A stretch of DNA of 64,000 nt from Callorhinchus milii. Lineage: Eukaryota. Of this stretch, positions 9,142 through 44,974 are shown piece by piece. Numbering within the stretch: position 1 is the first letter of the stretch; each line of letters starts with the position of its first letter. Below the pieces are notes generated by a model. That model was not told where the DNA came from. It searched no databases and saw nothing but the letters and a program-made list of their open reading frames with translations. The stretch lies in NCBI RefSeq assembly GCF_018977255.1, contig NW_024704755.1, positions 15,686,001 through 15,750,000 of the forward strand, written 5' to 3'. Both the position numbers and the translations under genes were made by a program.

Positions 9142-12100
9142 ATGGCGAGTGTTGTGTTTTACTGTTTCTCTCTCGTGGGGATGCTTTCCACAGGTAAGCG
9201 CTCGGTTTGTCTGCAAATATAGTCGCAGTCGTATTCATTTTTATACTAAACCAAGTGCTCTGGGGCACTACCCTGCGTGAGAGGCGTTATATAAATCCAA
9301 ATTGTTGCAAACAAAGTTCCGTTGCTTTACTTGCATCTCTTTACCTCATGCTTTATATTTTCTCTGTATTCGTTTTCATCGGCTACATATTTTACTCAAT
9401 CAGTATTTGAATTTGTTTTGATAGTTGTTGACGGCACTTCGGTCCAAGTAACTCAACTCCCCAAACACACAACTGTAATCAAAGGTGAAAGCATCACCTT
9501 CTACTGTGCCATTTCCTACTTTGAAGAAAACTCACGTACAAAAGTATACTGGTGGAAGCATGGGGAGAGGGAGTACCTGCAAACACGGCCAGATGCCAGG
9601 AAAATATTTGATATTGAAAAAGGAGGAAGCGGCTTCTTTCAGCTCCTGGATGTGAATCTTCAGGACTCTGGAGTTTATCACTGTGCTCTGGCGTTGGAGG
9701 GAAAAATAGCAAAAAATGGAACTGGATCGAATTTAACTGTATGCGGTAAGTGTTAACCCTTCGCAGAACTGGATCATTGTTATCTTTACATATTACGCAA
9801 ATATATCTAACGCACTATAATCTTAAGAGAATCAAAACTAGACTGAGAACTGCAGGTGTGTATGACATCTACATTGGGAAATTGTGCAGTATCTGAAAAG
9901 GAATGATGTTTCCTGGTTACCTAATTCTGGAGAGCAGAGGTTTGTTGTGTCCCCTGGAGTTTAATCAGATAAAGCCACATACTTGCCAACTCCTTGAAAT
10001 TTGAAAGCACATTTGGCTTCCTGCAATGCTGTGCAGGTAGGAAAAGCCCGACCGGTACCGGTTTGTCTTGAGGGTTAAACAGCAGATGAGTGGCAAGATT
10101 CCCTGCCCCTGTGACTATCTGGGGATCCAGGACAGATCTGGATCATTGCTATCTTTACATATTACGCAAATATATCTAGTAAACTATCCTCTTAAGAGAA
10201 TCAAAACTAGACTGAGAACTACATGTGTGTATGTCATCTACACTAGGAAATTGTCCAGTATCTGATAACAATAATAATCCTTGCATTTGATATAGCACTT
10301 TTCACCTCTTCTAGATATCTCAAAGCATTTTACAGAATATACTGTTGACCGTATATTTTGTGGGCGAAACTCGGCAGCCAATTGCGCACAGCAGCGTGCC
10401 ACAAACAGTCTTGGATTGAATGACCAATGTTGTTCTTTTTCTTGAGGGGTTATTATCAGGCATGTGGAGTAAGGAAACTTCCCCAAGGTTTCGCCGTGCT
10501 GGGGATCGAAACCAGGTCGCTCGCTTGCGATGTGAAGGCTCTCACCATTGAGCTACAGGATTCCACAATTGGAAAGGAATGACGTTCCTAGTTACCTAAT
10601 TCTAGAAAGCATTGGTTGGCAAATGCCAAGGCTTGTGTCCCACTGGAATTTAATCAGATAAAGCTGTATACTTGTCAGCACTTGAAACTTGAAAGCACTG
10701 TCTGACAAGCTTCCTGTTGTTTATACAGGTAGGACAAGGCCCCAGTTTACTTATTTGATGTGCAGGGTTAAACAGAATCTGAGTGGGAAGAATACCTGCC
10801 CTATGACTGTCTGCCTCTAATCCCAGGCTGGCTGGTCTGTCATCAGCAATGCCCAGGAATTTTGCAGATCTGCCAATCTCAGGAACGGAACTACTGACAC
10901 AGAGGATTGACTGAGGTGCAACAGTCTGCTGCTAAACATGTCACAGTGGAGAAAGTTCAGCTGCAAGGAAACTCTGTTAACTCCGCACCCACCCACCCCC
11001 ACCCCTCATACCCTCCCGAAGAGGGTATAAACATGATAAAACATGCAAGTAACCAAACCAACATAAATCAAAGTTCATCAATATCCGTTAGGTGTGTACT
11101 GTAAGTAATTCGAATAGAACTGTCCAAATAACACAATTTAGAGTAGCGTAACATCTCTGGAATGTCCATGTATAGGTGGGAACCATGGAATTCGCAGTTA
11201 AATATGGATATTTTTAAGCAGGTTGTGCTGGTTTTTCGCATTGAGGCCAGCCAATCAGCTGACCTCCAAAAAAATTTGTGGAAGGGAATCCTTACTTTGG
11301 TGAAGACTGAAATAGTAAATAACAGCAGATCATATTTTAATATTTTAATGCCACTCGCACCAGCTTTTTGAATGAATAATGTTGTTTCATTACTTTTGGC
11401 AACTGTGATTGCTGGAGAGTAAAGAAAATGCTATTACCGAGTAAATACAAAATATAGAAATCAGATCAATAATAATAATAATCCTTGCATTTGATACAGC
11501 GCTTTTCATGTCGGGAGGATGTCCCAAAGCGCTTCACAGAACACACTGTAAAGTGAATTGACTGTATATTTGTGGGCGAACGCGGCAGCCAATTACGCTC
11601 AGCAATGTCCCACAAACAGTCGTGGATTGAAAATGACCAATTTATTATTGTTTTTGGATTTGGAGGGATTAGATCAAGTTGTCACAGAGAAATTAATCAG
11701 ATATAAATCGGAATTAAATTTTCCTCAACTGAACAGAAATGGTGTAATTCTGCTCCATTATCTAACCCACAGTTCCACCAACGCCACTGAAGATAATCCC
11801 AAGGTTTACTAAACGTAATGCATCGGTGTCTCTGACTCTTGTGTGTCAAACGGCTGAGTATTACCCGAAGAATCTCATCCTGACTTGGTATAACAGTGTC
11901 ACCGAAATTACAACAGGAATAAATACCACTGAACAGCAGAATCCAGGGGGATTGTATGGAACTTCCAGTTCTATGGAAGTGGCACAGCCCATCCTGAGGG
12001 GGGCTGTTTATACCTGTAAGGTGTCACACATCAGCCTCAAGGCTTCAGAAATTGCCGAATACAAGGTTCAACTTTCTGAACGTTCCGATGAAGGTAGCAT

Positions 12101-12863
12101 GCCAGAAATCCTACTGTTAATCTTAACTGAATTTTCACATGATTATTGCAATTTATCGTAAAGCTCTTGATATTGTATTGTATTACCCAATAGCCTACAG
12201 ACTTCAGATATTGCCAAATATATAGTTCGCCTTCCTTAAAAATGTACCGTACTTAACTTACCAGCAATCTTGTTGTCATCTACTGTGAATTTCAAAATGT
12301 TTGTCAGAATTAATAAAGATGTCATATCTAAATTTTTCTTAAAAAACTTCTACTGGAAGATATTTGAAAGTTATATATTGATTTACAAGTTATTTGCCTC
12401 AAACAATTTAAAATCTCACTAAATATAAAAAATCATCTGAGTTGCGCTCAGGCTGTCACAGTACCATAATAATCACCATCTCATTGTTTTAATAGTGACG
12501 GTATTTTCTACAAAAAAAAACCATTCAGTGGATTCTCCTTACATGAAATTGCAGGACATTGTATTTTTAATCTATAACTGTCTCAAAGATTTTTTAAGTT
12601 TCACGATTTGAAGCTTATAATAGAGCCTTTCATGTCATTCCTTAGAGTAGTCTAAACACTGCATTTCATTTCAAATTCACCATCAATAATGTACAGTCTT
12701 GTGAACCTGTTGTTACTTTGCAGGTTTAGGTGTCAACATCTACGGAATTTCCCGTTTTCCATTGAGCGTGTTGGTAATGATTCTTTTAGTGGTTATCATT
12801 GTGGACCATTTCAGAATCACCCTCTGTAAAGGTAAGACTTTCATTCACGTCACTCTTATGTAA
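9142..12863 (+). CDS. Gene B: V(J)-C1-TM SIRP-like receptor, activating type (TM Arg, no Tyr in tail), ~277 aa
   Basis: Exons 9142-9193, 9425-9745, 11773-12093, 12724-12863 (TM exon read through its donor at 12832). All splice sites GT-AG, phase 1, total 834 nt in frame. TM IYGISRFPLSVLVMILLVVIIV. The 3' end is inferred. Confidence 0.8.
9425..9745 (+). CDS. Gene B V-set exon with J-like G strand
   Basis: 321 nt. VTQLPK..ITFYC..KVYWWK..QDSGVYHC..KNGTGSNLTVC, flanked by tgatag and gtaagt. Confidence 0.92.
10266..10566 (-). mobile_element. SINE in the gene B V-C1 intron
   Basis: Head ..gagctacaggattccac, Deu-type core, tail ataataatccttgcattt. Confidence 0.85.
11470..11670 (-). mobile_element. 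5'-truncated SINE with 7-bp TSD (agatcaa); absent from the paralogous site in gene D
   Basis: agatcaa at 11463-11469 and 11671-11677. The D empty site reads tcagatcaagttgtc. Confidence 0.9.
11773..12093 (+). CDS. Gene B C1-set exon
   Basis: 321 nt. LTLVCQTAEYYPKNLILTW..YTCKVSHISL (C1 motifs FYP-like, W, CxVxH). Confidence 0.9.
12724..12863 (+). CDS. Gene B transmembrane exon (Arg) with short read-through tail
   Basis: Acceptor tactttgcag. GLGVNIYGISRFPLSVLVMILLVVIIVDHFRITLCK, then GKTFIHVTLM* if the donor at 12832 is not used. Confidence 0.75.
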
Positions 12864-13779
12864 TTGCCACCATTTAGTTTTTAATTTATTTTGTTTCTTT
12901 AATATCAAGAGATGTTACATATATTTACCATTACGTTTTACATTTCCAAATTTTATTACATCTGTTATGTTCAATTGGCAATTAATTTTCTGATTTAAAA
13001 TAGTACTTTGGAAACTTAAATATATTAAGATACAACCTAATTTTGATTCATGATGACATATGGTCAGTGAAGACAATCATGTGATTGAAAGATTTGCAAT
13101 ATTCACAATCCGTTGCGTCTTTATAGATGTTAGAAGAGAGAAATGAAGAGAGACCGAGTTCCACTGGTGCAAATTGACCGACTGCAGTTAAAATAGATCT
13201 GAGGTAGAAGCACAGTATATCTCCAAGTAGAGCCGACAAACAAAACGGATGATTAGTATGTATGAAACCAGGTCTTAAAATGTTCCTGTTTATCTCTAAA
13301 CATGAAATGCTTTCTATATGGATAGAAAAATATATACCCTCGAGATAACGTGTACATGTAAATGACACAGCTGTGCTACCTCACTGTTGCTATTTTTTAC
13401 AAACGTTCATTAAATGGAGTAATAAACACGAACATTGCTTTGTAAAAAATGATGTCATTTTCAGAAATTAAAACTAAATTGCATCAAATCTTTGTGCTTT
13501 GTGTTTCCATATGACTTCTGTGTAATCTAACAAGGAAAACAAATTACAATATATAAATTATCTGCTCACACACATCTGATTTTATTGATTTTATACAAGG
13601 TTCAGTACTATAAGATTCAGCTGCATAGAACTGAGTAGAACAGATCTCCCACAAAATTAACCTTGGTTATTGTAAACACCAAAGAAGGATCCTGCTGTTT
13701 GCACTGATAGTATGTTCCACATTGATCTGCGCAAGAGACAATGTAGTTTAATACACTAACAGTAACAGGACAAACAGAG

Positions 13780-13930
13780 CAACTGGCTTCGCAAATCCCT
13801 CCAGCCAAAACCTATGTCCTGGGCCCTGAGAGATCGAAGGCAAACGTCAGTCATAACGTCATATTTCATTTCAAACAACCACAAACACTTATTACAGACC
13901 AGCAATGGGTTCAGGTTTAGTATCGGACCT
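13780..13930 (+). promoter_or_regulatory. Orphan family promoter/5'UTR with no downstream leader
   Basis: Aligns by eye to the gene E promoter (caactg.ctt.gcaaa, gtcagtcat.ac, aaacaac..., cagaccagca) and to the D 5'UTR (gggttcagg). Truncated by a SINE at ~13950. Confidence 0.55.
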
Positions 13931-13949
13931 TGATGAGGCTCTTGATGTG

Positions 13950-16030: not shown

Positions 16031-16326
16031 CAACGTGGGCTCCTGTTGGTTGCTAGTGATTAATAATAATTTGGTCACTCAATCCAAGACTGTTTGTGAG
16101 ACATTGCTGTGTGCAATTGGCTGCTGCATTTGTAATTCACTTTACAGTGCATTCTATGTACTTTGAGATGTCTCGAAGACGTGATAAGGCACTACATCAA
16201 ATGTGAGGATTATTATTATATGCTTACATAGTTTTACATTAACTGCACGGCAAATAAGAGGCCATTGGGCCTATCTAATCCGTGCCTGTGTTTACACTCC
16301 ACATATGTCCACACCCACTACTTACA

Positions 16327-17150: not shown

Positions 17151-17652
17151 GATACTTAGTCCCTCCCATAGCCTTCTTTTTCCTTGTCCCTCATATTCAT
17201 ATCCAGCTTTCCCTTAAATGAACAAGAACAACAGCAAGATTAACTTGCACTTATGTCTTGCCCTCCACGCAGGGTAGCATCAGAATGCTTAACAGTGGCA
17301 GAGCCTGAGGTAGTGGATTGGAGAGTGAGGACGACAGAGAGGTAGGGAGTTGCCAGTGAGTGAAGGGATTTTATATGTTCCAGTACAATATGTTAGAAGA
17401 AATTGAGTTTGTATTAATAAACTTCAAAAATCATGCACCTTTGGTCCTGTGTCCATGTCAGCCTTGCCTCCTCAGTCAACCTTATGTACAGCTCCCTTGC
17501 TCAACAACCTTGCTCCCATCACAACTCAAATCCATTTTTATCCCCAAAATTTGGAAAATTTGAAGAACATCTTCAAATACCATGAGAAGAATGAGAAGAA
17601 TGGTGTGGGGGGTCTGTAAAACAAAAGTACAATTACATCTTGTAATTGAGTC

Positions 17653-17974
17653 GTGGAGTCCTGTAGCTCAGTGGTTAGAGCACTCGCTTTGCAAGCAAGA
17701 GACCCGAGTTCAATTCCAGGCAGAGAGCGAAACCTTGGGCAAGTTTCCTTACTCCACACACCTAATAATAATCCCTCCAAAACCAAAAACAATAATAAAT
17801 TCGTCATTTTCAATCTACGACTGTTTGTGGGACATTGCTGTGCGCAATTGGCTGCCGCGTTCGCCCACAAATATGCAGTCAATTCACTTTACAGTGTCTT
17901 CTGTGAAGCGCTTTGGGACGTCCTCCCGACGTGAAAAGCGCTATATCAAATGCAAGGATTATTATTATTATTAT
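17653..17974 (+). mobile_element. Full-length young SINE
   Basis: Matches the consensus from gtggagtcctgtagc to the (TTA)n tail. Confidence 0.9.
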
Positions 17975-19636
17975 AAAAGTCTCCCTGATATGCCCTAATT
18001 TCCCTAATGTCCTAAGCCCATGCTGCTAAACTATGTGATTAAATCCAGTCTCCCAATCCATGCCAGATCTGGCTGGACTATACCAAAACCTACCACTGTG
18101 TCCTCAACTCAATAAAATTAATTTTCTACTCAAAGATATTCCAAGAGACCAAAGATAAATCCACACTCCTTTTCTCCCCCATTAATCAGCTCCTTTCACT
18201 TTCATATGCTGACTTCCCTTACAATATTTGAGGACATGATGGATATCTAAAATTGAGCAGATATGCGTAAGTGCCTCTGCTTCCATCTCTGCCACCTTCA
18301 CTCCTCCCCAATATGCCCCTCCATCCCCCTCAGCCCCACTCATTTCTCCTTCCTCACCTTTAACTCTGTTTTCCATCACTTGTCCTCTTTATCTCTCGCA
18401 TGAAACTGCCACTTCATTTTGACTCCAACTGCACATAATAATATTATAATAATAATAATCCTTGCTTTTGATATAGTGCCTTATCACATCTACGAGACAT
18501 CTCAAAGTGTGTCACAGAATATACTGTAAAATGAATTGACTGTATATTTTGTGGGCGAAACACATCCCTCCTCACACATTCGCCTTCCCGTATCCCTGCT
18601 CATCATTATAATCATCTCCACCTCTTTATTTTATACCGGCATAATAATAATAATTTAATAATAATAATCCTTACATTTGATATAGCGCCTTATCACATCT
18701 TCGCAAGGTCTCAAAGCACTTCACAGAATATACTGTCAAGTGAATTGACTGCATATTTTGTGTGTGAAATGGGAAAGGAAACTTGCCAGTGTTTCGCCCT
18801 GCCGGCAATCAAACCCAGGTCTTTCACTTGTGAGGCAAGTGCTCTAACCACTGAGCTACAATAATCTTTTCAGAAACACCATCATCAATCTGTTTCTCAG
18901 TAAACTCTTACTTAAGCTCTCCATGCTCTCCAGTTGCTAACCCAGCGCCAATTTGGCTTTCTTCTCTGAATGAATCATCACCTCCCATCTTCACTCCTTC
19001 CTCTCCCACCATTCCTTCATTGAGCTCCTCCAAACGTGATTCTATTCATATCGCATATGTATGCATAGTCACCACAGCCCCCAATGGATTCAATTCAAGA
19101 TTCTTGTTCTTGCATTCAAATCCTTGCAATCCACTGCAACCTTATACCCTAGTTTCTCTATCTCTCCGCCCATTCTGACCAATCATCTGTGTGTGAACTT
19201 TCAACCATTTTCTCCCAGCTTCTTGAAATCGACCCATAGTCTCCAAAATCCTTCAAATAAAATGGGTCACTCACTTCATGCCTGTTCATAGGACACAGCG
19301 TTACTGCGTGTGCATTGGCTGCCTGGTTCACCTACAACACAATCACTACCCTTCAACATAAATCCTATAAAGCGGTTTGAGGTACATTGAAATTGTTAAG
19401 AGAATAGACAATAATAATAATAATCCTTGCATTATAGATTTCCGACAAAGTTAACCCCAATGTTACAAAGAAACGTTACTGAGGCTTTAATGTACCATCA
19501 CTATTTGACAAGAGTCAACAATTTTAATTCAGTAAAGCTATAGGAAAATATATGTGAATTTCAGATCTGGTTAAGCTTTTATCTTTGCAGACAATATGAT
19601 AAGCGATTCAAGACACCTTTAAGTGGGGCATAGTCT

Positions 19637-19784: not shown

Positions 19785-22700
19785 ATGATGGCGAGTGTTA
19801 TTTTACAGACCCTGTCTTTCATAACGATAATTTTCAAAGGTTTGTGTTTAGAATTTTCTGAATATAAATGCAGTCATTTCAAGTGTTAATGAGTATTTTC
19901 CCTTCAGCCTCTTGCATTAGTAATGTAATCCTTACACTTTTAAGTCGTCGAGACATCTCAAAGCGCTTCACAGAAATTTTCTGCGAAGTGTAGTGCCTGT
20001 ATATTTGCCTCATGAAGAATGAGTTTATTGATGCAAAGTGAACTAACTATCTATTATGTACTGTGTGCCTTCCTTTGCTTTTGCTCTTTTTTATTGTTCC
20101 TTTCTCCCGCCTGTGAATCTTATGCATTGAGTGTTCAAATTTATTTCTGATAGTTATTGATGGTACTTTGATCGAAGTGGCACAACAACCCAAACACGGA
20201 ATTCCAAACATAGGTGCAAACATCACCTTCTATTGCATTTTTCCTGTCCGTCCAAACAACACACGCATAAAAGTGTACTGGTGGAAGCAGGGGGAGAGTG
20301 GATACCTGCAAACAAGAGCAGATAACAGGAAAATATTCGGTTTGGAAGATGGAGGGAACAGCTTCTTCCAGCTTTTGAATGTGAGTCCCCAGGACTCTGG
20401 TCTGTATTACTGTGCAGTAGCCCGTGAGGGAATAATAACAGGAAATGGATCTGGATCACATTTAACTGTATGCGGTAAGTGTGAATATTTGAAACATATT
20501 TAAACATTACACAAATAAATCAAACGAATGGCATGGAATGTTTTATTATTCTTATAAAATATTTAGGATACAATGAGTGGAGATTACAGTGGTGGAATAA
20601 ATTAAAGATGTAATGTAGTAAAATTCTTTAAAATAGTTATGCATCGCTGCCAATATTACTATGCTGTAGATGTTGAATGGTAATTTATTTATTCCGCACT
20701 AGTCGCTGTTATTCATGTTTAGCAGAATTTCTTGCAATGTAAGGACTTAGATCATGTTTTAAAAGTAAGTGATTTTTGACATTTAAGTAACTTTAATACT
20801 ATCTCCATAGATTCCTTAAATAAAATAACAGTCACAAACTCTTTATATGGCCTATTAAGAGTGGACAGAATGTATTTCCTACAGTGTTCTAGTTGTGATT
20901 GACTCTTGTGATTCCTTTGGCATTGATTCCCTTGGCATCGATTCCCTTGGTACGTCCTCCCGATGTGAAAGATGCTACACAAATATAATTTTATTGTTGA
21001 TATCCAGAATTTCAATCTGTAACTATAATACTGTCACTTTTCATTATTGATTTTGTTTCTCTTGGTCTCGAAGCAGAGAATAATTCATTTAGAATTGTAA
21101 AATCAATACAAATTACAGTCAGTCGCTTGAAAAGTGATTTTTTTCTTTCATGCTATCAGTGACAGTGATTAACAAATAATAATAATGATCCTTACATTTG
21201 TTATAACGCAGTTCACGTCCTCCCATCGTGAACTGCATTATATCAAATTTAAAAATCATTATTATTATTGCTATTATTATTGGGGTCCCCAAGTGCTTCA
21301 CAGTATACACTGTAAAGTAAATCGCTCAGATATATAACCCTCATATAACACTCATAGTCTCCGCTCCACCACAGGTGGCCTTTGGAATTCTCTCTCTCAA
21401 TCCCTCTGCCTTGCTCACTCATTCCCCCTTTCAGATCATGCCTGAAGACCTTTCTCTTCAATGGTGTTTACAGTCTTTCCCCCCATTCTTCACCCCCGGC
21501 TTAGTGTCAGCCTGCATTACTTTAGGCGCTTCAAGACCCCACCCCACGAGAAGGGCACTGCACAAATGTAAGTTGTTGTTGTACTGTAAATTGGAGTGAC
21601 TCTGTTTTGTGGACGAATATAAATCTGTTTTACGGATGAAGGGCGAGTAGCACCTTTAATTCTCCATTTATTTATTTCTATTGGAATTTCATCCATAACT
21701 GGTCTTTGCCATAAATCGATTGTGGCAGCAATAAATAGTAGCTTGTATTCAGCAATATAACTGAAAACTAAGTTATAAAGTAAACTAGAATCAAAGTTTT
21801 TTAAAGAAATGCATTGAATTCAAATCAGAATAAACTCCATTCGAAGCTAAGTTATGTGATTTTGTTCCATCATATTATTTACAGTTCCCCCAACACCACT
21901 GGAGATTTTCTCTGGCGATCCTGAAAGAGATCCATCTGTGTCTCTGACTCTTGTATGTAAAACGGCCGCATTTTACCCAGAGAATCTTCAGTTCAATTGG
22001 TATGAAAATGGCATCGAAATCACAAATGATATAATTACAAATGAACAACAGAATTCAGAGGGACTGTATGAAGCATCGAGCTCTGTGAAAATGAGACAGG
22101 ATATCAAAACCGGGACTGTTTATACCTGTGGGGTATTGCACCTCAGTCTCCGCACTGGAGGAACTGCCAACTACACAGTTGACCTTTCTGAAACAGGTGT
22201 GGTGCCAACTGTCAATTATAGTTAAGTACACCTTGACTTAGTATTTCAATTCATACCTCAAATTATAGTCATGAAAGTCACAAGCACTCCATGTTAAATA
22301 TATAAAAAAATTACTTTTAGTTGACAAGATTGGAACCGTGGGTATTGTGAGACACATTATTTTTATGCATGTAGAATAAACAATGAGATTCTAGCAACTG
22401 GTGACTATTTAAACAAGGTTACAAGATTGCAGGAGAAGTGCAGCTGAGGAAGACTCTTTTACGCATTTGATCGCATCCTTTCAAAACTGCTAACATATTA
22501 ACTTCCCAACATAACATTAAGCTGCTTTATATATCAATTAAAAGTAATGGGCTCAACCACCCTTTTGGTCACTTGTTCCAGTTCTTGATTTGAGAAACAA
22601 ATACTTTTTGGAAAAAGAAGGCAAAATATTGCAGATACTGGAAATCTGAAATAAAAACAGGAACACTCAACAGGTCAGGCAGCATCTATGGAGAGAGGAT

Positions 22701-24884: not shown

Positions 24885-25120
24885 AGGTAAGACATTCATT
24901 ACTTCCTTCAGAAATATTGTTCTAATTTTAAAGCATTTAGAGAGGAGAATAACAGTTGGATCTGAGAATGGTAAATTCATAAATATCGTTTTTAAAAAAA
25001 ATCAGATTCATTCTTTTACCACAAGTGAAGTTGTACTGCAGAATTGTAGCAGTTGTGATCGTGACATAAAGCCTCTGCAGATTTGAAGATGGATTGCTTC
25101 TTTAATCGAAAGCAATGCGG

Positions 25121-25342
25121 ATAATAATAATAATAATAATAATAATAATCCTTGCATTTGATATAGCGCTTTTCACGTCGGGAGGACGTCTCAAAGCGCT
25201 TCACAGAACACACTGTAAAGTGAATTGATTGTATATTTGTGGGCGAACGCGGCAGCCAATTGCGCACAGCAATGTCCCACAAACAGTCGTAGATTGAAAA
25301 TGACCAATTTATTATTGTTTTTGGTTTTGGAGTGATTATTAT
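25121..25342 (-). mobile_element. 5'-truncated young SINE
   Basis: Core and tail only. Confidence 0.85.
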
Positions 25343-31653: not shown

Positions 31654-32669
31654 GTTAAGTATTATCTCATTCGAAATCATAACATTATCTGAAACATCAT
31701 ATTTCCCAACGGTGAGCAAATGGTTACTGTATTACCTTCAAAAGCGTGCAAACAACTATAAATGTACAGTGAGTTGAAAAGTTTTTGCCAGGAATTTCAC
31801 AGGAATTCCACAGAATTCCACCTCTTTAGCAACAACTATCAGGAACCGAAAGCTTAATCCTTTTAATACTAGAAGCTCTCACAAAACACCGACACTGTAC
31901 TTTACATTATATCTTGTGACGTTACTTGGGGACATACTCCCAGTGTGAAGAGCACTGTACCAAATGTGTATAAGGATTATGATGGATTGTAAGAATTCTT
32001 AATTATTATGATTACATTATATGTCTAAACCAGATGAAATATATTGTACAAAAGCTCAATTGATTTTAAAACAGCATTTGAAATTATATCTCATGAACAA
32101 ATTATATGTTTATCTTATTGGTTTATTCCATTGTCCTTGATTAACTAGTGATGGATTAATTCAGATGAAAATAAACAATTTTATTAAATTCAAGAAGCAA
32201 TTTAAAATTTATGAATATATTTGAAACATGAGTTCCGAAGCAATCAAACTAAAACTGCTATTCCCTCATATATGACTGTGCCCTAACTCAACTCCGATTT
32301 CCTTTCCTTCACAATTATTTTCTCAACAATGATAAAAAAAGTTGTAAAAAAAAATGATGTTTGGATTGCCAACCTTTTCAGTAGTGGGTTAGGAGTAGTC
32401 TGCGGAAGATATTTATATCCATTATGTGATGAGAGTGAGAACACTGAGTTGTCAATAGGAAATAAAATCCCTGCTCACATTCTGCATATAAACAGCCGTT
32501 CTAAATATTCTTTTAAGAAGTATAGCTGTAACTCAGTAACTGGTTTTGCTATTGGATGCAGATATCTTGCTTAAAATCCTTCAGGCTTATTGAACAATTG
32601 GACAGCATATGCTTCACTTTAGCCAGTTTCTCAGAACAATTTACACAAGTGTCCAGATAAGGTGGACAC

Positions 32670-32998
32670 GTGGAGTCCTGTAGCTCAATGGTTAGAGCAC
32701 TCGCTTTGCAAGCAAGAGACCTGAGTTCAATTCCAGGCAGAGGGCGAAACCTTGGGCAAGTTTCCTTACTCCACACAGAGCCTAATAATAATCCCTCCAA
32801 AAACCAAAAAACAATAATAAATTGGTCATTTTCAATCTATGACTGTTTGTGGGACATTGCTGTGCGCAATTGGCTGCCGCGTTCGCCCACAAATATACAG
32901 TCAATTCACTTTACAGTGTGTTCTGTAAAGCGCTTTGGGACGTCCTCCCGATGTGAAAAGCGCTATATCAAATGCAAGGATTATTATTATTATTATTA
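32670..32998 (+). mobile_element. Full-length young SINE
   Basis: Matches the consensus. Confidence 0.9.
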
Positions 32999-35461
32999 AG
33001 GTAATTATGGAGCCCACATAACGAGTAATACATTATCAGTGCATAACCCCTTTCATTGCATCAACAAATAAAACTCTAGGAATCTATTTTAAAATAATAT
33101 TTGCGGAATTTGCACATAAATTAAAATGTAAGACAGTTTCATAGAAGTGATAAAGTTCGAATTCAGTATAATTACACAGTCTAGGTTGGTGATAAGGAAC
33201 AACAAGATCAACCCAATGAACTCACCCGTGATAGGAAAGCTCCATTCTATTTCATTTTGGTCATCCGAATAGCTGACACATGATCATTCATAAACATAAG
33301 CAAAGTAGACTGAGTTCCACATATTCACTCCTCCTACGCTTGGAATTATCCTGGAGTCTGGAATGAAAGACACAACATCACCCTGGAGGGACATATCCTG
33401 CTTACCTACTTCCAGAAAGCACTGTGGCATGTTGGCAAGAACCGAAAAGTGTAGACTTCAGAGTTTGCATTTGTGATACTGCCAGAGTTTAACCCACTAA
33501 TACTGTACAGATGGTCATCGAGAGGACTGTTTAGCAAGCTTCCCGCTGCTTGTCCAGCTAGGACCACCCAATCAGTCACAGCTTTGTTATACAAGGTTAG
33601 CAGGAGTCATGGGAAGAACACAGCGTGCCTATTCTTGCATTAATGCTGAAACCATGTATAAAATAGCTGCCGCTACTTATCACAGAATGAGCTGCAATGA
33701 ACTTCTCGTGGCCGAAGATAACCTGATAAACCATGTTCTATATTTACAATCAGACGAGACGCTGATGTTGAAAATGATGTTAAAGGAAACTGTGAAGTTC
33801 ACCAGAAACCACACGGTAGAATGTAGTTTCCTGTTTGTTACATTTTAGCAGCTACTTGCCTGCAAGAACGCCTACAGTTTGACCTTATAACGGCAGCATT
33901 GCCCAACATATTATCAACCAGTTTTAAGTTAACTATTTATGATCACACTCAGATGCGAAGGCGCTATCAATGAAGTCAGGCTGACTCTCAATTTCAGTAA
34001 CAACTGCACCTTGAAATATGGATGACTTTTCCCAATCCACATACGTAAAATTAGTTTCTAAAATGAATCCACCCACCCCCAACTTTATTGTTCTTAAAAA
34101 TAATAAGTGCTGCAAACATTGGTAAGAAGCCAGTAATTTGTATGTACATACTATTCCAAATTGCACCAGTATTAAACCTGATATTCGCATGAACATGATT
34201 TGAATGTCACACTGAACCCAAGTAAATACTTGCAGAAAATAGGTTTAAAATGCTCTAATTTAACTGCTTTAAGACTCCCCATTCTTCACAATAATCCGAT
34301 CTATTTTGCTCCATTTGTGCACTTAAAATGAATGTAATTCAATACGTATTAACCAGTGACTTTAAAGTCAATTAAGATAAACCCCTATGTTTCATCCTCA
34401 CTGTGTTGGAATCAAAGCTTATCAGGTTGTCTCTTATTCCAACATGTCTCTTTCTGGGATCTGAAGGCTCTGGAAACCTGTACCTCCCTCAAGCACGTCT
34501 ACAGTACTTTAATGCACTGCGAACGATAGGCCGACAGCCTGGCTGTCGGTAAGGCTTAGGGTTCAGACTAAGATTGGTGATTCTTCCCATTGGGTCATGT
34601 TAGCCGAGCAAGATTAAGCCCTTGAAAGTAGCTATAAAAACAGTGATATGCTTCCCAGGTGCATTGCGGATTTGGATGTTTAAACTCCAATAGGAACCGC
34701 AACATACTTTCGGCGTCCCCAAACCTTAGCTCTGGCCAACTGGCACCTAATAATTACCAGAATTGAGTAAACAGGTACAATCATTCCCTCCAAAGAGATA
34801 ATCCTTATTCAATTTCAGATGGTAATATTTTCCATTAGTAGATGGTAAGCATATGCGACTTCATAGTCTGATTTTAATCAGTTTAAACATGGTGAAAGGT
34901 TTTTGCATGCATCAATACCCGGCTGGCCCAAAATAGGATATCATGATAAAACATGAGATTGAAATTCGGGAGAAAATCAGTTATGACCTGCAATAACAGT
35001 CAGAAGTGAAATATATGTTGAGAAATTGCTGGAAACATCATTCTATCCACACATGTGATTCTGAAGAAAGGATTTATTGCAGATATTGCACCAATGACGT
35101 TAAATATGTTAAAGGTTATTAAAGATGTCAATGTTAAGGTTGGTTAAGTGTTAATAACAAATGTCTTTAAAAGCCGCTTTATGCGAATCTTTAATTTATA
35201 ATGGCTGAACCTTCAGTGCTGGATAATTTGTTGAATGTCAGTAAGTGACCAGGAGCAAATAAAACACCAGACGCGATGAAACGCACTGTTGTTGTCAGCG
35301 CCGGCACTGGTGAATGATGCAATTTTAATGCAATGCAATTTATTATCCACATCTGGTACAGACACACAGCCCATGCAATTGAAGATCAATGACAAAGTCG
35401 CATAATAGTTGTAATATATAACACTGATGTAATAAGATAAAATAGGTTGCTCGGTCTGCAT

Positions 35462-38850: not shown

Positions 38851-40121
38851 ATTGCTTATATCCCCGAGAGTTCTGCTGGTATTTTGATCATTTTCATTCA
38901 CAAACCATCAACCTGGCCTGACAACTGTCAACCTGGCCAAGCAGGGCAGACAAAAGATAAAAGATTCATCTGAAACATATTCTTTCTGGTTGGAAAAAAT
39001 CTACTTTTAAACCGCAGTACACGATGGTCATCCAATAAATCAGAGGGAGCTCAAAAACGTTTCCCTTTCACCCACAGCTAAAGGTGATGATTGCATTATA
39101 TTGATATTCTCAACTGAGCAATGATAACACTATATACTCTCCTTCCGATTTATAATCTTCTGTTTCCCTGCAGTTAGGAAATTTCCATCAAGGTAACCCA
39201 ATCACTGATGAACAATTCTTCTTTGCATTGTGTAGAAAAACTCAATGCATTTGTGAATATCCCAGAAATCGTTACACTGAGTTCTACTTCGAGACAAACA
39301 TTTTGTTGCATGTGAAATATGCTCACAGGACCTACATTCCTATTTCACTTATCATTTGCGCTCCAAATTGTATTATTATTGATCAAAATGAGAATCTTTA
39401 CTACATATTAAGTTTACACAAAAAAGGCTTCTTTTAAAGCAGCAACTCGTTTCGGTTTGAACATGATTTACAATCTCAATTCTAGAAAAATCTAGGAAGA
39501 TAATTCCAAATTTCAAATGAATGACATTTCTTCAGCTGTGAGACAAATGAGAGAAATTTAAATCGGGATTAAAACTATTACGTTTTAGCAATATACAATA
39601 AACAAGCAGCTGAAAAAATAAAGTAAAAATCGGATTTGGTCCATAAATTCCTAATTCTCCTTTAACATTTTAATCGTTGTCGAATATTTTGATTCTTCAG
39701 GCGTCCAATAATTGTAAAGTATTAATTTGTTATAATATGTTATTCTGAACGTTTTCAAATAATTAAACAAAAATAGGATTAGTTTGATGTACGAAACTAA
39801 GAATGCTTCAATAGCACAATAAAATACCTAATTCATACGCTCTTTCTAAAAGGTCCCTTCAAATGGTTCCATTCGGCAGCTACAGTTGGAGGAAACTGTT
39901 GGAACAGATCTCCTGCGATATGGGTGTCAAACCAAACTCGGTGGTCACAATCATGAACATAACTTTCAGACGTTGCAATGAGGAACTATCCTGTAGATTA
40001 TCACGAGATAATAGTTCAAACAGTAATAACGGATGTATTGTAAATTTCAGATACAATTCACCTTTCATCTGTATCGACAGTAAGTAAGTTTTAGACGCTC
40101 CTCAAGTAGACAATAACCTTT

Positions 40122-40175
40122 CTGCAAATGGCAATCAATTAAAAGGGTATTGCTCAACCTACAGAGACAGGACGT
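40122..40175 (+). promoter_or_regulatory. Gene D proximal promoter (CTGCAAAT; ETS-site variant CAGGACGT)
   Basis: Positions about -144 and -98 from ATG, matching the paralogues. Confidence 0.45.
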
Positions 40176-40265
40176 TAAACGTCACTGCCTCACATTCATT
40201 TTTAGCATCTTGCACCCCTCAGTACAGACCAGCAGTGGGTTCAGGATAATCGCAGACAGTGATCC

Positions 40266-43200
40266 ATGGCGAGTGTTGTGTTTTACTGTTTCTCTCTCGT
40301 GGGGATGCTTTCCACAGGTAGGTATTTGGTTGAATTAAATAGATACTCGCAGTCGTTTTCATTTTTATACTGAACCAAGTGCTCTGGGGCACTACCCTGC
40401 GTGAGAGGCGTTATATAAATCCAAATTGTTGCAAACAAAGTTTTGTTGCTTTACTTGCATCTTTACCTCGTGCTTTAAATTTTCTCTGTATTCATTTTCA
40501 TCGGCTACATATTTTACTCAATCAGTGTTTGAATTTGTTTTGATAGTTGTTGACGGCATTTCGGTCCAAGTAACTCAACTCCCCAAACACACAACTGTAA
40601 TCAAAGGTGAAAGCATCACCTTCTATTGTGCCATTTCCTACTTTGAAGAAAACTCACGTACAAAAGTATACTGGTGGAAGCATGGGGAGAGGGAGTACCT
40701 GCAAACACGGCCAGATGCCAGGAAAATATTTGATATTGAAAAAGGAGGAAGCGGCTTCTTTCAGCTCCTGGATGTGAATCTTCAGGACTCTGGAGTTTAT
40801 CACTGCGCTCTGGCGTTGGAGGGAAAAATAGCAAAAAATGGAACTGGATCGAATTTAACTGTATGCGGTAAGTGTTAACCCTTCGCAGAACTGGATCATT
40901 GTTATCTTTACATATTACGCAAATATATCTAACGCACTATAATCTTAAGAGAATCAAAACTAGACTGAGAACTGCAGGTGTGTATGACATCTACATTGGG
41001 AAATTGTGCAGTATCTGAAAAGGAATGATGTTTCCTGGTTACCTAATTCTGGAGAGCAGAGGTTTGTTGTGTCCCCTGGAGTTTAATCAGATTTTAAAGC
41101 CACATACTTGCCAACCCCTTGAAATTTGAAAGCACAGTTTGGCTTCCTGCAATGCTGTGCAGGTAGGAAAAGCCCGACCGGTACCGGTTTGTCTTGAGGG
41201 TTAAACAGCAGATGAGTGGCAAGATTCCCACTCACCCCTTACTGCCACCCCCGCTCCAAAGAGGGTAACTATTTTGGCACTATAAACATGATAAACATGC
41301 AAGTAATCAATCCAAATCAAAGTACATTAATATCCGTTAGGTGTACACTGAAAGCAATTCGAACACAACTAGCCAAGTCACACAATTTAGAGTTCTTAAC
41401 ATCTCTGGAATGTCCATGGATAGGTGGGAACCAAGGAATTCACAGTTAAATATGAATACTTTTAAGCAGTTTGTGATGGGTTTCCACATTGATGACCGAA
41501 ACAGAATCCTTACTTTGGTGAAGATTGTCAATAGTAAATAGCAGTCGACTGTGTTTTAATGCCGCCTGCACCAGGTTTTTGCGATGAAGTTATTTACTTA
41601 AATGTGAACTACATTTATAAATAGTAATGTCGACTCATTACTTTTGGCAACTGCGATTGCTGGAGAGTAAAGAAAATGTTATTACGAGTAATTCATTAAA
41701 TACAAAATGTAGAAATCAGATCAAGTTGTCACAGAGAAATTAATCAGATATAAATCGGAATTAAATTTTCCTCAACTGAATAGAAATGGTGTAATTCTGC
41801 TCCATTATCTAACCCACAGTTCCACCAACACCACTGAAGATAATCCCAAGGTTTACTAAACGTAATGCATCGGTGTCTCTGACTCTTGTGTGTCAAACGG
41901 CTGAGTATTACCCGAAGAATCTCATCCTGACTTGGTATAACAGTGTCACCGAAATTACAACAGGAATAAATACCACTGAACAGCAGAATCCAGGGGATTG
42001 TATGTAACTTCCAGTTCTATGGAAGTGGCACAGCCCATCCTGAGGGGGGCTGTTTATACCTGTAAGGTGTCACACATCAGCCTCAAGGCTTCAGAAATTG
42101 CCGAATACAAGGTTCAACTTCCTGAACATTCTGAAAAAGGTAGCATGCCAGAAATCCTACTGTTAATTATAAGTGTCTTTTTCCATGATTAGTTAATTTA
42201 TCGCAAAGCTAATTGCTAAATATTTTTTAAAAATCAACTTTTAGTAAAAGGTATTAGAAATGTAGGCGTATGCGCATTATCTTCCTCGAAAAGTAATGCA
42301 AGAAGACTCATTAAAATATGAAAACTTGAAATCATCAATTTAATAACAGAATCTCTATTCTGGTGAAACCTGGAGTTAATTAAATTATACATTAGTTAAC
42401 AGGCCACAAACATCGTGTTGAGAAAATAAATGAACGTCATGCACCGTAATGTATCGCTTCTTTTTTGTATCTTGCCATTTTACCAGGGTTTGACTATTGG
42501 ATCGTTGGATATGCAGTGGCTGCACTGATTTTTCTAGTAGTTTTAATTATTATTGGGAAGCGATGCAAATGGATGAAATGGAGAGGTAAGAAATATCTGT
42601 TTTTATTGAAATTAAGTGTATTATTTCCATTTTAATTCAATGTTTCAATGAGTAAATGAGACATCCCCGGATTATGCAATGGGAAGAGAGGTTTGAAGAC
42701 TAAATGTCTGTGCAGTCCACTAATGATTATTAAATATTAATCAATTTCAGAATTTGTATTCATTCTAGTCCACACATTATTTTAAATTTCTGTCATAGAA
42801 ATTTAATACATATTTCATTAATTTAGTTTCATTAATTTTAGGCTCCCATAAAGAAATTAATGGATCGCACCGTTCTGGAGAACAGGTAACTTTATATAAC
42901 TTGTCTCAGCAGGTTTGTCACCTTGCAGAGATTGATGGAATAAATAGAGATTATTCCTTATAGATTTTATAACATTTTAACTCATTCTCCTTCGAGCATT
43001 TATACGTCCTCACTTTATAATTTGCGCACAATTATTGAGCACCACGTATAATATAGTGCATTTGCTAGCAGTATATATTATCAACTATAAGTATTGTAAA
43101 ATATTCTCAAGTGATTTTTAAAATATTTTAAACTAGGCAGCTGAAGTTCACTTGTTCATCGCAGTGTTACACTCAGTGTTTACGCAGTAGTGTGAAGTCC

Positions 43201-44974
43201 TGTAACCCTGTGGTCAGAGCACTCGACTCGCAAGGGAGAGACCTGGGTTCACTTCTCGGCAGGGCGAAATGTTGAGCAAATTTCCTTACTCCACATGCCT
43301 GTTTAGCTAACAGTAAGTAGGAACTCAGTTGTTAGTCGATTGGCGGATTGCTTTTTCGGGATAACAATCCTTAAAAAAAAATAATAATTTGGTCACTCAA
43401 TCCATGACTGCTCTTCACAATTGGCTGCTGCGTTTTGCCCACAAATATAGCGAATTCACTTCACAGTATATGCTGTGAAGCGATTTGAGACGTCTAGAGG
43501 TTATGAAAAGCACTATATCAAATGCAAAGATTATTATTAGTGTGTACAGAACTAAAGACAATGAACCAATCATGGAACTACGAGTTGCATTTTACAGACT
43601 GTGCAGGGAGCACACGATGAGATGGCTTATGTCACATTGGATTTGACAAGTTCCCAGAAATCTCCAAGACCTAAATATCAGGAGAGGACAGCGTACACCC
43701 AGGTGAGAAATACTAAATTGAGATATAATTCCTTCAGATCCTAAATCATGGGATTAGAAACTAGAATGAAACTCCAGTTGTTTAACATAATATTATTTCT
43801 GTGCTTCACGCTCCTCAAATCATCTAATTCTGGTTGAATCTTGGAATGCGAGTAAGGCAAATTATTTGACTATAGGAACATTACAGATGAATAATATATG
43901 TCCTTTGGGTACTTAGAAACTGCCTAATAACTGAGTTCCCTCTTCCCTAACATCCTCGTGGAATTTTATAGTAGCTACTATTAATCGTATCTACATGAAA
44001 AGGAGTTGGAATATTTAACTCCTAGTTTTTTTATTAACCAAGCAATGGAAAGGGAAAGCGGTGCTGGAAATTCTGAGTGCATTTATTTGGGAGATTTCTG
44101 AAGTCTGACAACATAATTAAATTAATTACATTTCCAAATATTTGCTTCCCAGACAAAGGGAGCAATTGGTAACAAGCCAACATATGCAGCTCGGGATTTA
44201 TCTGGCTCCAAGAAAATAGGAAAGACTAAACCTACCTCCAAGAGTACAGAATATGCCAAGGTAAGGGTCATCAACCCATGGAGCTAAGAGACAAGAAATG
44301 TTACAATACTACATATCGAAGCTGAAAATTGGTTAATATTGAGAGTCTTCCCTGCCATATATATTGGGTGTCACTTATGGGTACGCCAGTTATATGTTGG
44401 CGTCTCGTCATCACCTGCAGTTATTAGCAATTATTTATTACCTTAGGATTTTTCATTCCACTAAAAATCTGTCTGGTACATTCATATTTGACAAACCAGA
44501 ACCATTTTAATTAACAAAATTAATTGCCATCAACATCTTCATTATTGCAGCATGCGACTACCAGGATGGTAGAAGATGACCTAGATGTACCTTAGTCTTT
44601 TTTCTTATACCAATTCTAATGCTCCTGTGTTCAAAGTAATATCTTGTACCAATCTAATAATGTTTCTTAATCTGGATGATATCTTTATCACACGTTTCAT
44701 AAAAATTATGGCTGCCATATAACTAGAACAAAGACTACCAATGCAAATCTTATAAATGGTATAAATATTTGGCAGAAATGTGGCAGAGTTGCGTAAAGTG
44801 ACTTAAACAAAGAACTAACAGTATTCCGAAATTTCGTCCTTACAGGTCAAACAAGGGGTAAACAAGCTGACTTATGCTGCTCTGGATTTGGGTAGCTCAA
44901 AAAAAACAGGAATGCCTAAATTCAACAAGAATACAGAATATGCCGAGGTACAGATGAAAACAGCAGAGCAGTAG
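40266..44974 (+). CDS. Gene D: V(J)-C1-TM inhibitory receptor with three ITIM/ITSM modules (~392 aa if the C1 frameshift is corrected)
   Basis: Exons 40266-40317, 40547-40867, 41820-42139, 42487-42585, 42842-42885, 43598-43702, 44153-44260, 44846-44974, all GT-AG. The C1 exon is 320 nt (G4 at 41993-41996 versus G5 in B), giving TAA at 42005-42007. Confidence 0.75.
40547..40867 (+). CDS. Gene D V-set exon (318/321 nt identical to gene B)
   Basis: Direct comparison gives three substitutions, one of them nonsynonymous (T/I near the N-terminus). Confidence 0.92.
41820..42139 (+). CDS. Gene D C1-set exon (1-bp deletion as sequenced)
   Basis: Near-identical to the B C1 exon. ccaggggattg versus ccagggggattg in B. 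Confidence 0.8.
42487..42585 (+). CDS. Gene D transmembrane exon (uncharged)
   Basis: GFDYWIVGYAVAALIFLVVLIIIGKRCKWMKWR, flanked by ttttaccag and gtaag. 99 nt. Confidence 0.85.
42842..42885 (+). CDS. Gene D 44-nt juxtamembrane exon (phase 1 to 0)
   Basis: GSHKEINGSHRSGEQ|gtaac. Same length as the gene E equivalent at 58495-58538. Confidence 0.75.
43192..43539 (+). mobile_element. SINE, long subfamily, in a gene D intron
   Basis: Head, extra segment, core and tail all visible. Confidence 0.8.
43598..43702 (+). CDS. Gene D cytoplasmic module 1
   Basis: TVQGAHDEMAYVTLDLTSSQKSPRPKYQERTAYTQ|gtgaga. Phase 0-0. Confidence 0.8.
44153..44260 (+). CDS. Gene D cytoplasmic module 2
   Basis: TKGAIGNKPTYAARDLSGSKKIGKTKPTSKSTEYAK|gtaagg. 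Phase 0-0. Confidence 0.8.
44846..44974 (+). CDS. Gene D last exon (ITIM LTYAAL plus ITSM TEYAEV)
   Basis: VKQGVNKLTYAALDLGSSKKTGMPKFNKNTEYAEVQMKTAEQ*, acceptor ccttacag. Confidence 0.85.
   Translation, partial: VKQGVNKLTYAALDLGSSKKTGMPKFNKNTEYAEVQMKTAEQ

What the first reader, a model, noticed from the sequence alone, without database searches (positions are those of the whole stretch)
9425..44974. B and D are a near-perfect activating/inhibitory pair with homogenised ectodomains
The leaders are identical (52/52 nt), the V exons differ at 3 of 321 nt (one amino acid) and the C1 exons differ at only a handful of positions. Much of the intron between V and C1 is visibly more diverged, and the TM and tail exons are of different types. 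Patchy near-identity centred on ligand-binding exons is the gene-conversion signature known for Siglec-5/14, Siglec-11/16 and SIRPalpha/beta1. In those cases the activating twin is thought to counter pathogens that exploit the inhibitory receptor. Applying that model here is inference.
Basis: partly seen in the sequence, partly recalled or inferred. Interest (0 to 1): 0.88.

Follow-up and report, generated by a model that had tools for sequence, protein, structure and literature searches.

The report
Elephant-shark paired receptor genes share patched ectodomains
Two neighbouring immune-receptor genes of the elephant shark, one with an inhibitory tail and one with a short tail and a charged membrane anchor, carry almost the same outer domains because pieces of DNA were copied between them several times; this pattern is well known in mammals, is clearly traceable here, and leaves open whether either gene works.

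Summary
The window is Callorhinchus milii MU249845.1:15,686,001-15,750,000, part of a cluster of at least 400 kb of SIRP-like V-C1 Ig receptor genes. The leaders match 52/52, the V exons differ at 3/321 (one amino acid), and the C1 exons differ by 7 substitutions. The TM and tail exons are unrelated: B has an Arg-bearing TM and a short tail, D has an ITIM plus two ITSM-like motifs. The identity is a significant mosaic. Young tracts under 1% diverged (9406-10103, 11672-12074) include introns and sit in an old background 11-20% diverged. That rules out a uniform recent duplication and exon-only selection.

Two points were missed. First, the V exon did not arrive by in-register conversion. A 1,082-bp D-lineage cassette (9051-10132) was pasted out of register. 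It left B's dead old leader (8187-8238) and a second copy of the start of intron 2, which points to transfer from the D lineage into B. Second, D's C1 exon has a 1-nt deletion (G4 versus G5) that frameshifts it in this assembly. The older assembly's RefSeq protein is intact.

B has no protein model, a displaced promoter and a lost conserved stop, so its function is uncertain. This is a new member of a known kind.

The parts
7321..7691 (+). Old upstream (promoter-side) homology of B with D 39704-40072, 66.7% identity. It occurs only in this pair within the window.
8187..8238 (+). Relic of B's former leader exon (MASVAFQYFTLMGMLST). Its donor is GT>AT. The region 8102-8244 is 80% identical to D 40178-40323.
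8320..8894 (+). Two tRNA-derived SINE copies (8320-8571, 8570-8894) inserted in B's former intron 1.
8959..9053 (+). Relic of the 3' end of B's former intron 1 plus the first 9 nt of the former V exon (9045-9053). The acceptor is AG>TG. It is 85.6% identical to D 40460-40558.
9051..10132 (+). D-lineage cassette pasted into B. It runs from 87 nt upstream of the ATG to about 385 nt into intron 2 and equals D 40179-41229. The left junction shares ACG with the old V exon; the right junction shows possible CAGA microhomology. The last 18-29 nt match B's own old intron copy (10797-10813), not present-day D.
9142..9193 (+). B leader exon, 52/52 identical to D 40266-40317.
9194..9225 (+). A 32-nt patch just after the leader donor with 14/32 mismatches to D. 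Unexplained.
9425..9745 (+). B V exon (phase 1-1, AG/GT), 3/321 differences from D 40547-40867.
9406..10103 (+). Young tract 1: 4 substitutions and 2 indels in about 698 nt, covering the V exon and the first 358 nt of intron 2.
10133..11025 (+). B's old intron 2 resuming at about its nt 20. 10133-10264 is 89% identical to D 40886-41017. A SINE sits at 10265-10569. 10570-10800 is 81% identical to D 41016-41235. About 190 nt follow that D lacks.
11026..11467 (+). Old-stratum middle of intron 2, 88.1% identical to D 41281-41722, with 12 indel events covering 94 nt.
11468..11671 (-). B-only 5'-truncated SINE copy with target-site duplication AGATCAA. It marks the left edge of young tract 2.
11672..12074 (+). 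Young tract 2, in register: 3 substitutions and 1 indel in 403 nt, covering the last 101 nt of intron 2 and the first 302 nt of the C1 exon.
11773..12093 (+). B C1-set exon, 321 nt, open. Homology with D ends at 12165, 72 nt into intron 3.
12724..12831 (+). B TM exon: GLGVNIYGISRFPLSVLVMILLVVIIVDHFRITLCK. It has an Arg at the outer end and AG/GT borders. The ORF runs to a stop at 12861-12863 if unspliced. Paralogues keep an in-exon stop that B lost through a 1-nt deletion.
40266..40317 (+). D leader exon.
40547..40867 (+). D V exon.
41820..42139 (+). D C1 exon, 320 nt. The G4 run at 41993-41996 (G5 in B) causes a frameshift and an early stop in this assembly.
42487..42585 (+). D TM exon (GFDYWIVGYAVAALIFLVVLIIIGKRCKWMKWR), with an uncharged core.
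42842..44974 (+). D cytoplasmic exons: 42842-42885, 43598-43702, 44153-44260 and 44846-44974 (stop included). Motifs are MAYVTL, TEYAKV, LTYAAL (ITIM) and TEYAEV (ITSM-like).

Best explanation
B and D are two members of a tandem cluster of V-C1 (SIRP-like) Ig receptor genes in the elephant shark. Their 5' modules (promoter side, leader, V, C1, up to 72 nt into intron 3) share an old common origin, now 11-20% diverged. Their 3' modules come from different exon lineages. B has a short-tailed TM exon with an Arg at its outer end, shared with gene C and with an annotated paralogue. D has an uncharged TM and four cytoplasmic exons carrying an ITIM and ITSM-like motifs, shared with E and other paralogues.

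On this old background, DNA was copied between the two genes at least twice more.
1. A 1,082-bp cassette from the D lineage (5'UTR, leader, intron 1, V exon, start of intron 2) replaced B's V exon. The repair was out of register and used microhomology. It stranded B's former leader and intron pieces as relics, which points to D lineage into B as the direction.
2. One or two later in-register conversion tracts (9406-10103 and 11672-12074) brought the V and C1 exons and their flanking introns to under 1% divergence.

Shown here: the mosaic, the relics, the junctions, the discordant exon trees and the motifs. Inferred: D signals through phosphatases bound at the ITIM; B pairs with an ITAM adaptor through its Arg; the two share a ligand; the exchange is kept by selection.
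For: - Origin and family: C. milii, LOC103185890 is D; V-set plus C1-set; SIRP alpha is the best non-antibody PDB match across both domains.
- Mosaic: segment identities; sliding window; longest run 285 against a permutation maximum of 217, p<=2e-4; intron-in-tract 2/459 against mid-intron 47/395, p=1.5e-14; the middle stratum differs from both the young and the old strata, p=1.8e-5 and 1.7e-7.
- Relics and out-of-register junctions. Upstream old homology.
- Discordant exon relationships: (V 99.1% and C1 97.8% for B-D against <=75% to any other copy; TM 47.5% for B-D against 69.5% B-C, 66.7% B to the L002 paralogue, 57.3% D-E).
- The B-type TM exon is a real exon type. It is the last coding exon of an annotated 302-aa C1-set paralogue and keeps the Arg (FAICRFAL...VDHFRITSL*).
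- D's exon chain is confirmed independently by the older assembly's RefSeq protein XP_007902823.1.
Against: - B has no protein model in either annotation or in the 5.8-billion-protein collection.
- B's present leader sits about 1.5 kb and three SINE insertions away from the old upstream homology.
- B lost the stop codon its paralogues keep.
- B's V and C1 exons were overwritten so recently that being open says nothing about selection on B.
- D is frameshifted in this assembly.
- The cassette's last 18-29 nt do not match present-day D, so the donor may have been an ancestral D, an allele or an unsampled paralogue.
- The direction of the youngest tracts is unknown.
- No expression, ligand or adaptor data could be reached.
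- A catshark short-tailed homologue shows no such twin.
Confidence: 0.75

Rival explanations
1. B is a decaying or non-functional gene that merely receives sequence from its active neighbour. The twin resemblance would then be a by-product of ectopic repair in a repeat-rich cluster, not a maintained activating counterpart.
For: - No protein model for B exists.
- B's former leader is dead, and the new leader comes with only 87 nt of donor upstream sequence, behind three SINEs.
- A 1-nt deletion removed the stop conserved in C and in the annotated paralogue.
- Pseudo-V exons elsewhere in the window show that members of the family do decay.
Against: - All four B exons are open with AG/GT borders and matching phases.
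- The only exon specific to B (TM, 36 codons) keeps the Arg and the VDHFRIT motif seen in the annotated paralogue.
- The longer tail remains short and free of motifs either way.
Confidence: 0.35
2. A single recent segmental duplication fused a copy of D's 5' half to an activating-type 3' half. The divergence in the intron would then be only later insertions and deletions.
For: The homology has sharp ends at 9051 and 12165, and several B-only blocks are SINE insertions.
Against: - Aligned non-repeat intron columns differ by 11.9% in the mid-intron against 0.4% in intron parts of the tracts (p=1.5e-14).
- B holds two copies of the leader region and of the start of intron 2, at different divergence from D.
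- Three identity strata are statistically distinct.
Confidence: 0.03
3. Purifying selection on the ligand-binding exons keeps them alike, with no sequence exchange.
For: The exons are more alike than most of the intron.
Against: - The most identical stretch is intronic: 9746-10103 has 1 substitution in 358 nt.
- Synonymous sites in V are nearly unchanged (2 differences).
- The last 21 nt of the C1 exon are 76% identical.
Confidence: 0.02
4. Assembly artefact: the B-D near-identity, or one of the copies, was produced by misassembly or by polishing with mismapped reads.
For: - B has no independent confirmation.
- The G4/G5 difference in D lies inside a stretch nearly identical in both copies, just where read mapping is ambiguous.
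Against: - D's exon chain with its D-specific residues (Ile22, LYV, LPEHSEK) is also in the older assembly's RefSeq protein.
- Polishing cannot create out-of-register junctions, relics or SINE-bounded tracts.
- B and D have different flanks, with gene C between them, so they are not haplotigs.
Confidence: 0.05

Closest known systems
Siglec-5/Siglec-14 and Siglec-11/Siglec-16 (primate paired receptors homogenised by gene conversion; PMC4042635, PMC5701461)
   Same: - Neighbouring genes, with an inhibitory ITIM tail against a charged-TM short tail.
- Near-identical N-terminal Ig domains, and a conversion tract with breakpoints that includes non-coding sequence.
- In those pairs one partner is a polymorphic null or pseudogene. 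Here one partner may likewise be broken (the D frameshift) or unannotated (B).
   Different: - A different Ig family (V-C1 rather than a sialic-acid-binding V-set plus C2 domains), and a holocephalan rather than a primate.
- The V exchange here is an out-of-register cassette replacement with relics, not an in-register tract.
- No ligand, expression or population data.
SIRP alpha / SIRP beta1 (mammalian paired V-C1-C1 receptors)
   Same: - A V-set domain followed by a C1-set domain. SIRP alpha (2wng) is the best non-antibody PDB match across both domains.
- NCBI names relatives 'SIRP beta-1-like' or 'PTPNS1-like'.
- An ITIM-type tail set against a short tail with a basic TM residue.
   Different: - Only two Ig domains here.
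- B's basic residue is an Arg at the outer edge of the TM (in the style of FcR-gamma-coupled receptors), not the mid-membrane Lys that pairs SIRP beta with DAP12 (my own knowledge).
- Orthology and CD47 binding are untested.
- Automated names for relatives also include tapasin-related, Ig lambda-like and NCR3LG1-like.
CEACAM1/CEACAM3-type paired receptors, including those of Xenopus (PMC2832619, PMC5112662)
   Same: Coevolution of ligand-binding N domains between ITIM/ITSM and activating members within a tandem cluster. It has been reported outside mammals.
   Different: - The activating CEACAMs carry ITAM-like tails rather than a charged TM.
- The domain type differs (IgV N domain plus C2 domains).
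Hagfish APAR and teleost NITR/LITR paired families (my own knowledge, not checked here)
   Same: Non-mammalian clusters with activating and inhibitory members that share very similar V domains.
   Different: Different families. I did not compare sequences, and I know of no described relic-bearing cassette replacement.

Membership tests
Paired activating/inhibitory Ig receptors homogenised by non-allelic gene conversion | Two genes in one tandem cluster | tested here: met
   B (9142-12831) and D (40266-44974) lie 31 kb apart on the same strand, in a V-C1 cluster of at least 400 kb.
Paired activating/inhibitory Ig receptors homogenised by non-allelic gene conversion | Ectodomains nearly identical while other cluster members are far more distant | tested here: met
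   V is 99.1% and C1 97.8% identical between B and D, against 63-75% to C, E and the P0015 gene.
Paired activating/inhibitory Ig receptors homogenised by non-allelic gene conversion | Mosaic identity with breakpoints, introns included, and discordant trees for ectodomain and signalling exons | tested here: met
   The V tract, however, was installed out of register.
Paired activating/inhibitory Ig receptors homogenised by non-allelic gene conversion | One partner with ITIM/ITSM motifs | tested here: met
   D's tail has LTYAAL, TEYAKV and TEYAEV. As assembled, D's reading frame is broken upstream of them, in C1.
Paired activating/inhibitory Ig receptors homogenised by non-allelic gene conversion | The other partner has a basic TM residue, a short tail, and associates with an ITAM adaptor | tested here: inconclusive
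   The Arg in GISRFPLSVLV... and the short tail are present, and the Arg is conserved in one annotated paralogue but is Leu in C. Adaptor association cannot be tested, and B's end and expression are unknown.
Paired activating/inhibitory Ig receptors homogenised by non-allelic gene conversion | Both partners expressed and binding the same ligand | not testable with these tools
   No transcript or binding data could be reached. No protein model for B exists.
SIRP family (orthologues of mammalian SIRPA/SIRPB) | V-C1-C1 three-domain ectodomain | tested here: not met
   There is only one V-set and one C1-set exon between leader and TM in B, C, D and E.
SIRP family (orthologues of mammalian SIRPA/SIRPB) | Sequence closer to SIRPs than to other V-C1 proteins | tested here: inconclusive
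   SIRP alpha 2wng scores E=1.2e-12 across both domains, but antibody chains and UrIg2 score as well or better. Automated names of relatives are mixed.
SIRP family (orthologues of mammalian SIRPA/SIRPB) | CD47 binding and conserved synteny | not tested
   No tool covers binding, and synteny beyond the cluster was not examined.

The most novel reading that the evidence does not exclude
The activating-type twin of a SIRP-like pair in a holocephalan was rebuilt by a microhomology-mediated copy-paste of the inhibitory gene's 5'UTR-leader-V cassette and then re-homogenised by ordinary conversion. The stranded old leader is a physical record of the direction, inhibitory into activating. This would show that repeated retargeting of an activating decoy to its inhibitory partner's ligand-binding domain was already at work in the deepest-branching living jawed vertebrates, and that it can proceed by non-homologous templated repair as well as by classical conversion.
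Probability: 0.3. Interest if true: 0.6.

Novelty: new member of a known kind. Interest (0 to 1): 0.45.

Why it matters
Paired receptors whose activating member tracks the inhibitory member's binding domain are a textbook outcome of host-pathogen conflict in mammals. A clear case in a chimaera, in a V-C1 family that is spread across sharks, rays and chimaeras but that I could not find described in the papers searched, extends the pattern to the base of the jawed vertebrates.

The locus is also unusually readable. Relics, SINE-bounded tract edges and three divergence strata give the order and, for one event, the direction of the transfers. Practically, it flags an unannotated gene (B) and a probable homopolymer error or null allele in LOC103185890 (D) in assembly GCA_018977255.1.

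Tried and rejected
- Homologues of B's TM and tail in the 5.8-billion-protein collection: nothing scored. The exon type was found only by tblastn in a fetched neighbouring locus.
- B's terminal exon beyond the TM exon: no convincing candidate. One 68-nt block is conserved with gene C downstream (13064-13131 and 25756-25823), and its meaning is unknown.
- Literature on this family in elephant shark or other cartilaginous fish: none found. The UrIg paper (PMC12227049) concerns another family.
- A near-identical inhibitory twin of the catshark short-tailed homologue P0008, to test generality: the next catshark hit is 51% identical.
- A donor for the 32-nt divergent patch after the leader, among the relic leader and gene C's leader intron: none found.
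- Haplotig or false duplication: rejected, because the flanks and 3' exons differ and gene C lies between the two genes.
- Exon-only selection and a single uniform duplication: both rejected on intron identity.
- Rfam found only tRNA-like SINE heads.


Full report
**Origin and setting**

The window has no N. A protein search with B's exons gave Callorhinchus milii proteins as best hits. The locus fetched for one of them is 100% identical to window 32019-54974. The window is therefore GCA_018977255.1 MU249845.1:15,686,001-15,750,000, plus strand.

Pfam finds one V-set and one C1-set domain. The best solved structures are antibody chains, shark UrIg2 and, across both domains, SIRP alpha 2wng. 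Relatives occur in many sharks, rays and skates under mixed automated names: SIRP beta-1-like, PTPNS1-like, tapasin-related-like. Further paralogues lie at 15.34 and 15.64 Mb of the same scaffold, so the cluster spans at least 400 kb.

In the window, tblastn finds the following copies:
- an ITIM tail exon of an upstream gene (about 186-293);
- a pseudo-V with stops (5233-5465);
- gene B and gene C;
- an antisense pseudo-V (35628-35467);
- gene D and gene E.

**Gene models**

B has four exons, all with AG/GT borders and phase 1:
- leader 9142-9193;
- V 9425-9745;
- C1 11773-12093;
- TM 12724-12831.

D has eight exons:
- leader 40266-40317, V 40547-40867, C1 41820-42139 and TM 42487-42585;
- cytoplasmic exons 42842-42885, 43598-43702, 44153-44260 and 44846-44974.

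This chain matches RefSeq XP_007902823.1 from the older assembly. D's tail carries LTYAAL (ITIM), TEYAKV and TEYAEV (ITSM-like), and MAYVTL.

B's TM exon reads GLGVNIYGISRFPLSVLVMILLVVIIVDHFRITLCK. It has an Arg at the outer end of the hydrophobic core and no tyrosine motif.

**The observation**

- The leaders match 52/52.
- The V exons differ at 3/321, with one replacement (Thr>Ile).
- The C1 exons differ by 7 substitutions, five of them in the last 19 nt.
- D also lacks one G of a G5 run. D's C1 exon is thus 320 nt long and frameshifted, with a stop four codons later.

The older assembly's protein reads NPGGLYV through this point, with the D-specific Val 13 nt downstream. The current RefSeq model, XP_007902823.2, is cut to 201 aa and starts at the first Met after the shift. 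So this is either an assembly error in a stretch where B and D reads cannot be told apart, or a real null allele. I cannot tell which.

**The mosaic**

Segment identities:

| Segment (B coordinates where given) | Identity to D |
|---|---|
| 5' flank | 93.0% |
| Leader exon | 100% |
| First 32 nt of intron 1 | 14/32 mismatches |
| Rest of intron 1 | 95.9% |
| V exon | 99.1% |
| First 358 nt of intron 2 | 99.7% |
| Middle of intron 2 (11026-11467) | 88.1%, with 12 indels |
| Last 101 nt of intron 2 | 99.0% |
| C1 exon, nt 1-300 | 99.3% |
| C1 exon, last 21 nt | 76.2% |
| First 72 nt of intron 3 | 88.6% |

Beyond that point there is no homology. The longest identical run (285 columns) exceeds all 5,000 permutations, whose maximum was 217. 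Intron columns inside the tracts differ at 2/459 against 47/395 in the mid-intron (p=1.5e-14).

The 5' part of the block (9051-9405 without the patch, 14/323 differences) differs from both the young tracts (7/1100, p=1.8e-5) and the old stratum (141/970, p=1.7e-7). There are therefore three strata. A uniform recent duplication and exon-only selection are both excluded.

B holds a second, older copy of the 5' end. It consists of:
- a relic leader at 8187-8238 (ATGGCGAGTGTTGCATTTCAG...), 80% identical to D, whose donor is GT>AT;
- two SINEs;
- a relic of the end of intron 1 plus the first 9 nt of a V exon (8959-9053), with acceptor AG>TG.

At 9051-9053 (ACG, shared by both sequences) the sequence jumps to a point 87 nt upstream of D's ATG. 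It then follows D to 10103. At 10133 B's intron 2 starts again from about its nt 20:
- 10133-10264 is 89% identical to D;
- a SINE occupies 10265-10569;
- 10570-10800 is 81% identical to D.

So a 1,082-bp cassette replaced about 330 nt of B (its V exon), out of register at both ends. The cassette's last 18-29 nt match B's own old copy (10797-10813) and not present-day D. D lacks about 190 nt at that place. The donor was therefore an earlier D, an allele or an unsampled paralogue.

The relics point to transfer into B. Old homology also continues upstream (7321-7691 with 39704-40072, 66.7%, occurring only in this pair). B's present leader thus sits about 1.5 kb and three SINEs downstream of the old promoter-side sequence.

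The C1 tract, in contrast, is in register. Its left edge is a B-only SINE with target-site duplication AGATCAA (11468-11671). Its right edge lies inside the exon at 12074.

**Signalling modules**

TM-exon identities:

| Pair | TM exon nt identity |
|---|---|
| B-D | 47.5% |
| B-C | 69.5% |
| B and the last exon of an annotated 302-aa C1-set paralogue | 66.7% |
| D-E | 57.3% |

That paralogue's exon reads GVDGKLYEFAICRFALCICVILLLVIVTVDHFRITSL*. It keeps the Arg and has a stop inside the exon.

Gene C has Leu in place of the Arg, a Glu five residues earlier, and the same in-exon stop. B lost that stop through a 1-nt deletion. Its ORF continues for 10 more codons if the transcript is unspliced.

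Only exons align between B/D and C/E, while the introns of B and D still align with each other. The pair therefore first arose by joining a shared 5' module to different 3' modules, with a breakpoint in intron 3. It was later patched.

**Interpretation**

The sequence exchange is well supported. Calling it 'gene conversion' is accurate for the C1 tract and probably for the youngest V tract. For the cassette, 'templated, microhomology-mediated replacement' fits better.

The functional reading is inference from family knowledge: inhibitory D through its ITIM, activating B through Arg-adaptor pairing, and a shared ligand. The elasmobranch short-tailed homologues P0007 and P0008 also carry an Arg in their TM, which shows the family has such members. 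Their TM is of the D type, not the B type.

Whether B works is open. It has no protein model in either annotation or in the protein collection, a displaced promoter and a lost conserved stop. Its V and C1 exons are too recently overwritten to inform on selection.

**Comparison and novelty**

The pattern matches the paired-receptor coevolution described for Siglec-5/14, Siglec-11/16, CEACAM1/3 (including Xenopus), KIR and CD300A/C (papers listed). It is not a SIRP by the three-domain criterion, and orthology is untested.

I found no paper describing this family in cartilaginous fish. A catshark short-tailed member has no such twin among the hits, so this is a lineage-specific event and not a family-wide rule.

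Verdict: a real, well-resolved new member of a known kind. It adds a mechanistic detail (the relic-bearing cassette) and two annotation flags.

Noticed in passing
window 41993-41996 (D C1 exon): A G4 run where B has G5 frameshifts LOC103185890 in this assembly. RefSeq XP_007902823.2 is cut to 201 aa, while XP_007902823.1 from the older assembly is intact at 392 aa. This is either a homopolymer error in a stretch nearly identical to B, or a null allele.
   Followed up: partly
window 19785-24886 (gene C): A third V-C1 gene: leader 19785-19839, V 20154-20474, C1 21885-22196, TM 24781-24886. It has a B-type TM exon, but Leu replaces the Arg, a Glu sits five residues earlier, and there is a stop inside the exon (tail DYCRFQPF). 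It looks like a tail-less member with no basic TM residue.
   Followed up: partly
window 54108-59702 (gene E): A fourth V-C1 gene of inhibitory type: V 54108-54428, C1 55679-55990, TM 56377-56475. Its tail exons carry LTYANL and TEYAQI (about 58960-59031 and 59586-59702). Its leader was not located.
   Followed up: partly
window 5233-5465 (+) and 35628-35467 (-): Two V-exon fragments of the same family with in-frame stops, one of them on the opposite strand. They are decayed cluster members.
   Followed up: no
window 186-293: An ITIM/ITSM-type tail exon (NKIIYSVLDL...VEYSQIQV) belonging to a further gene that starts upstream of the window.
   Followed up: no
window 4739-5055, 6931-7248, 8320-8894, 10265-10569, 11468-11671, 17652-17980, 25130-25343, 32669-33002, 49167-49496, 54721-54935, 56800-57122: A young family of tRNA-derived SINEs of about 325 nt. 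The best copies are 94-97% identical to each other, and 11 tRNA-like heads pass the Rfam threshold. Three copies interrupt B's former introns, and one bounds the C1 tract.
   Followed up: partly
window 9194-9225 versus 40318-40349: A 32-nt cluster of 14 mismatches directly after the identical leader exons, inside an intron otherwise about 96% identical. No donor was found.
   Followed up: partly
window 13064-13131 and 25756-25823: A 68-nt block, 81% identical, downstream of the TM exons of B and C. It may be part of a shared 3'UTR or a conserved element.
   Followed up: no
L002 327-441 (MU249845.1 about 15,629,954-15,630,068): An annotated 302-aa C1-set paralogue ends with a B-type TM exon that keeps the Arg (FAICRFAL...VDHFRITSL*). 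It lies just upstream of the inhibitory gene XP_007902824.2, which suggests that activating-type and inhibitory-type genes alternate along the cluster.
   Followed up: partly
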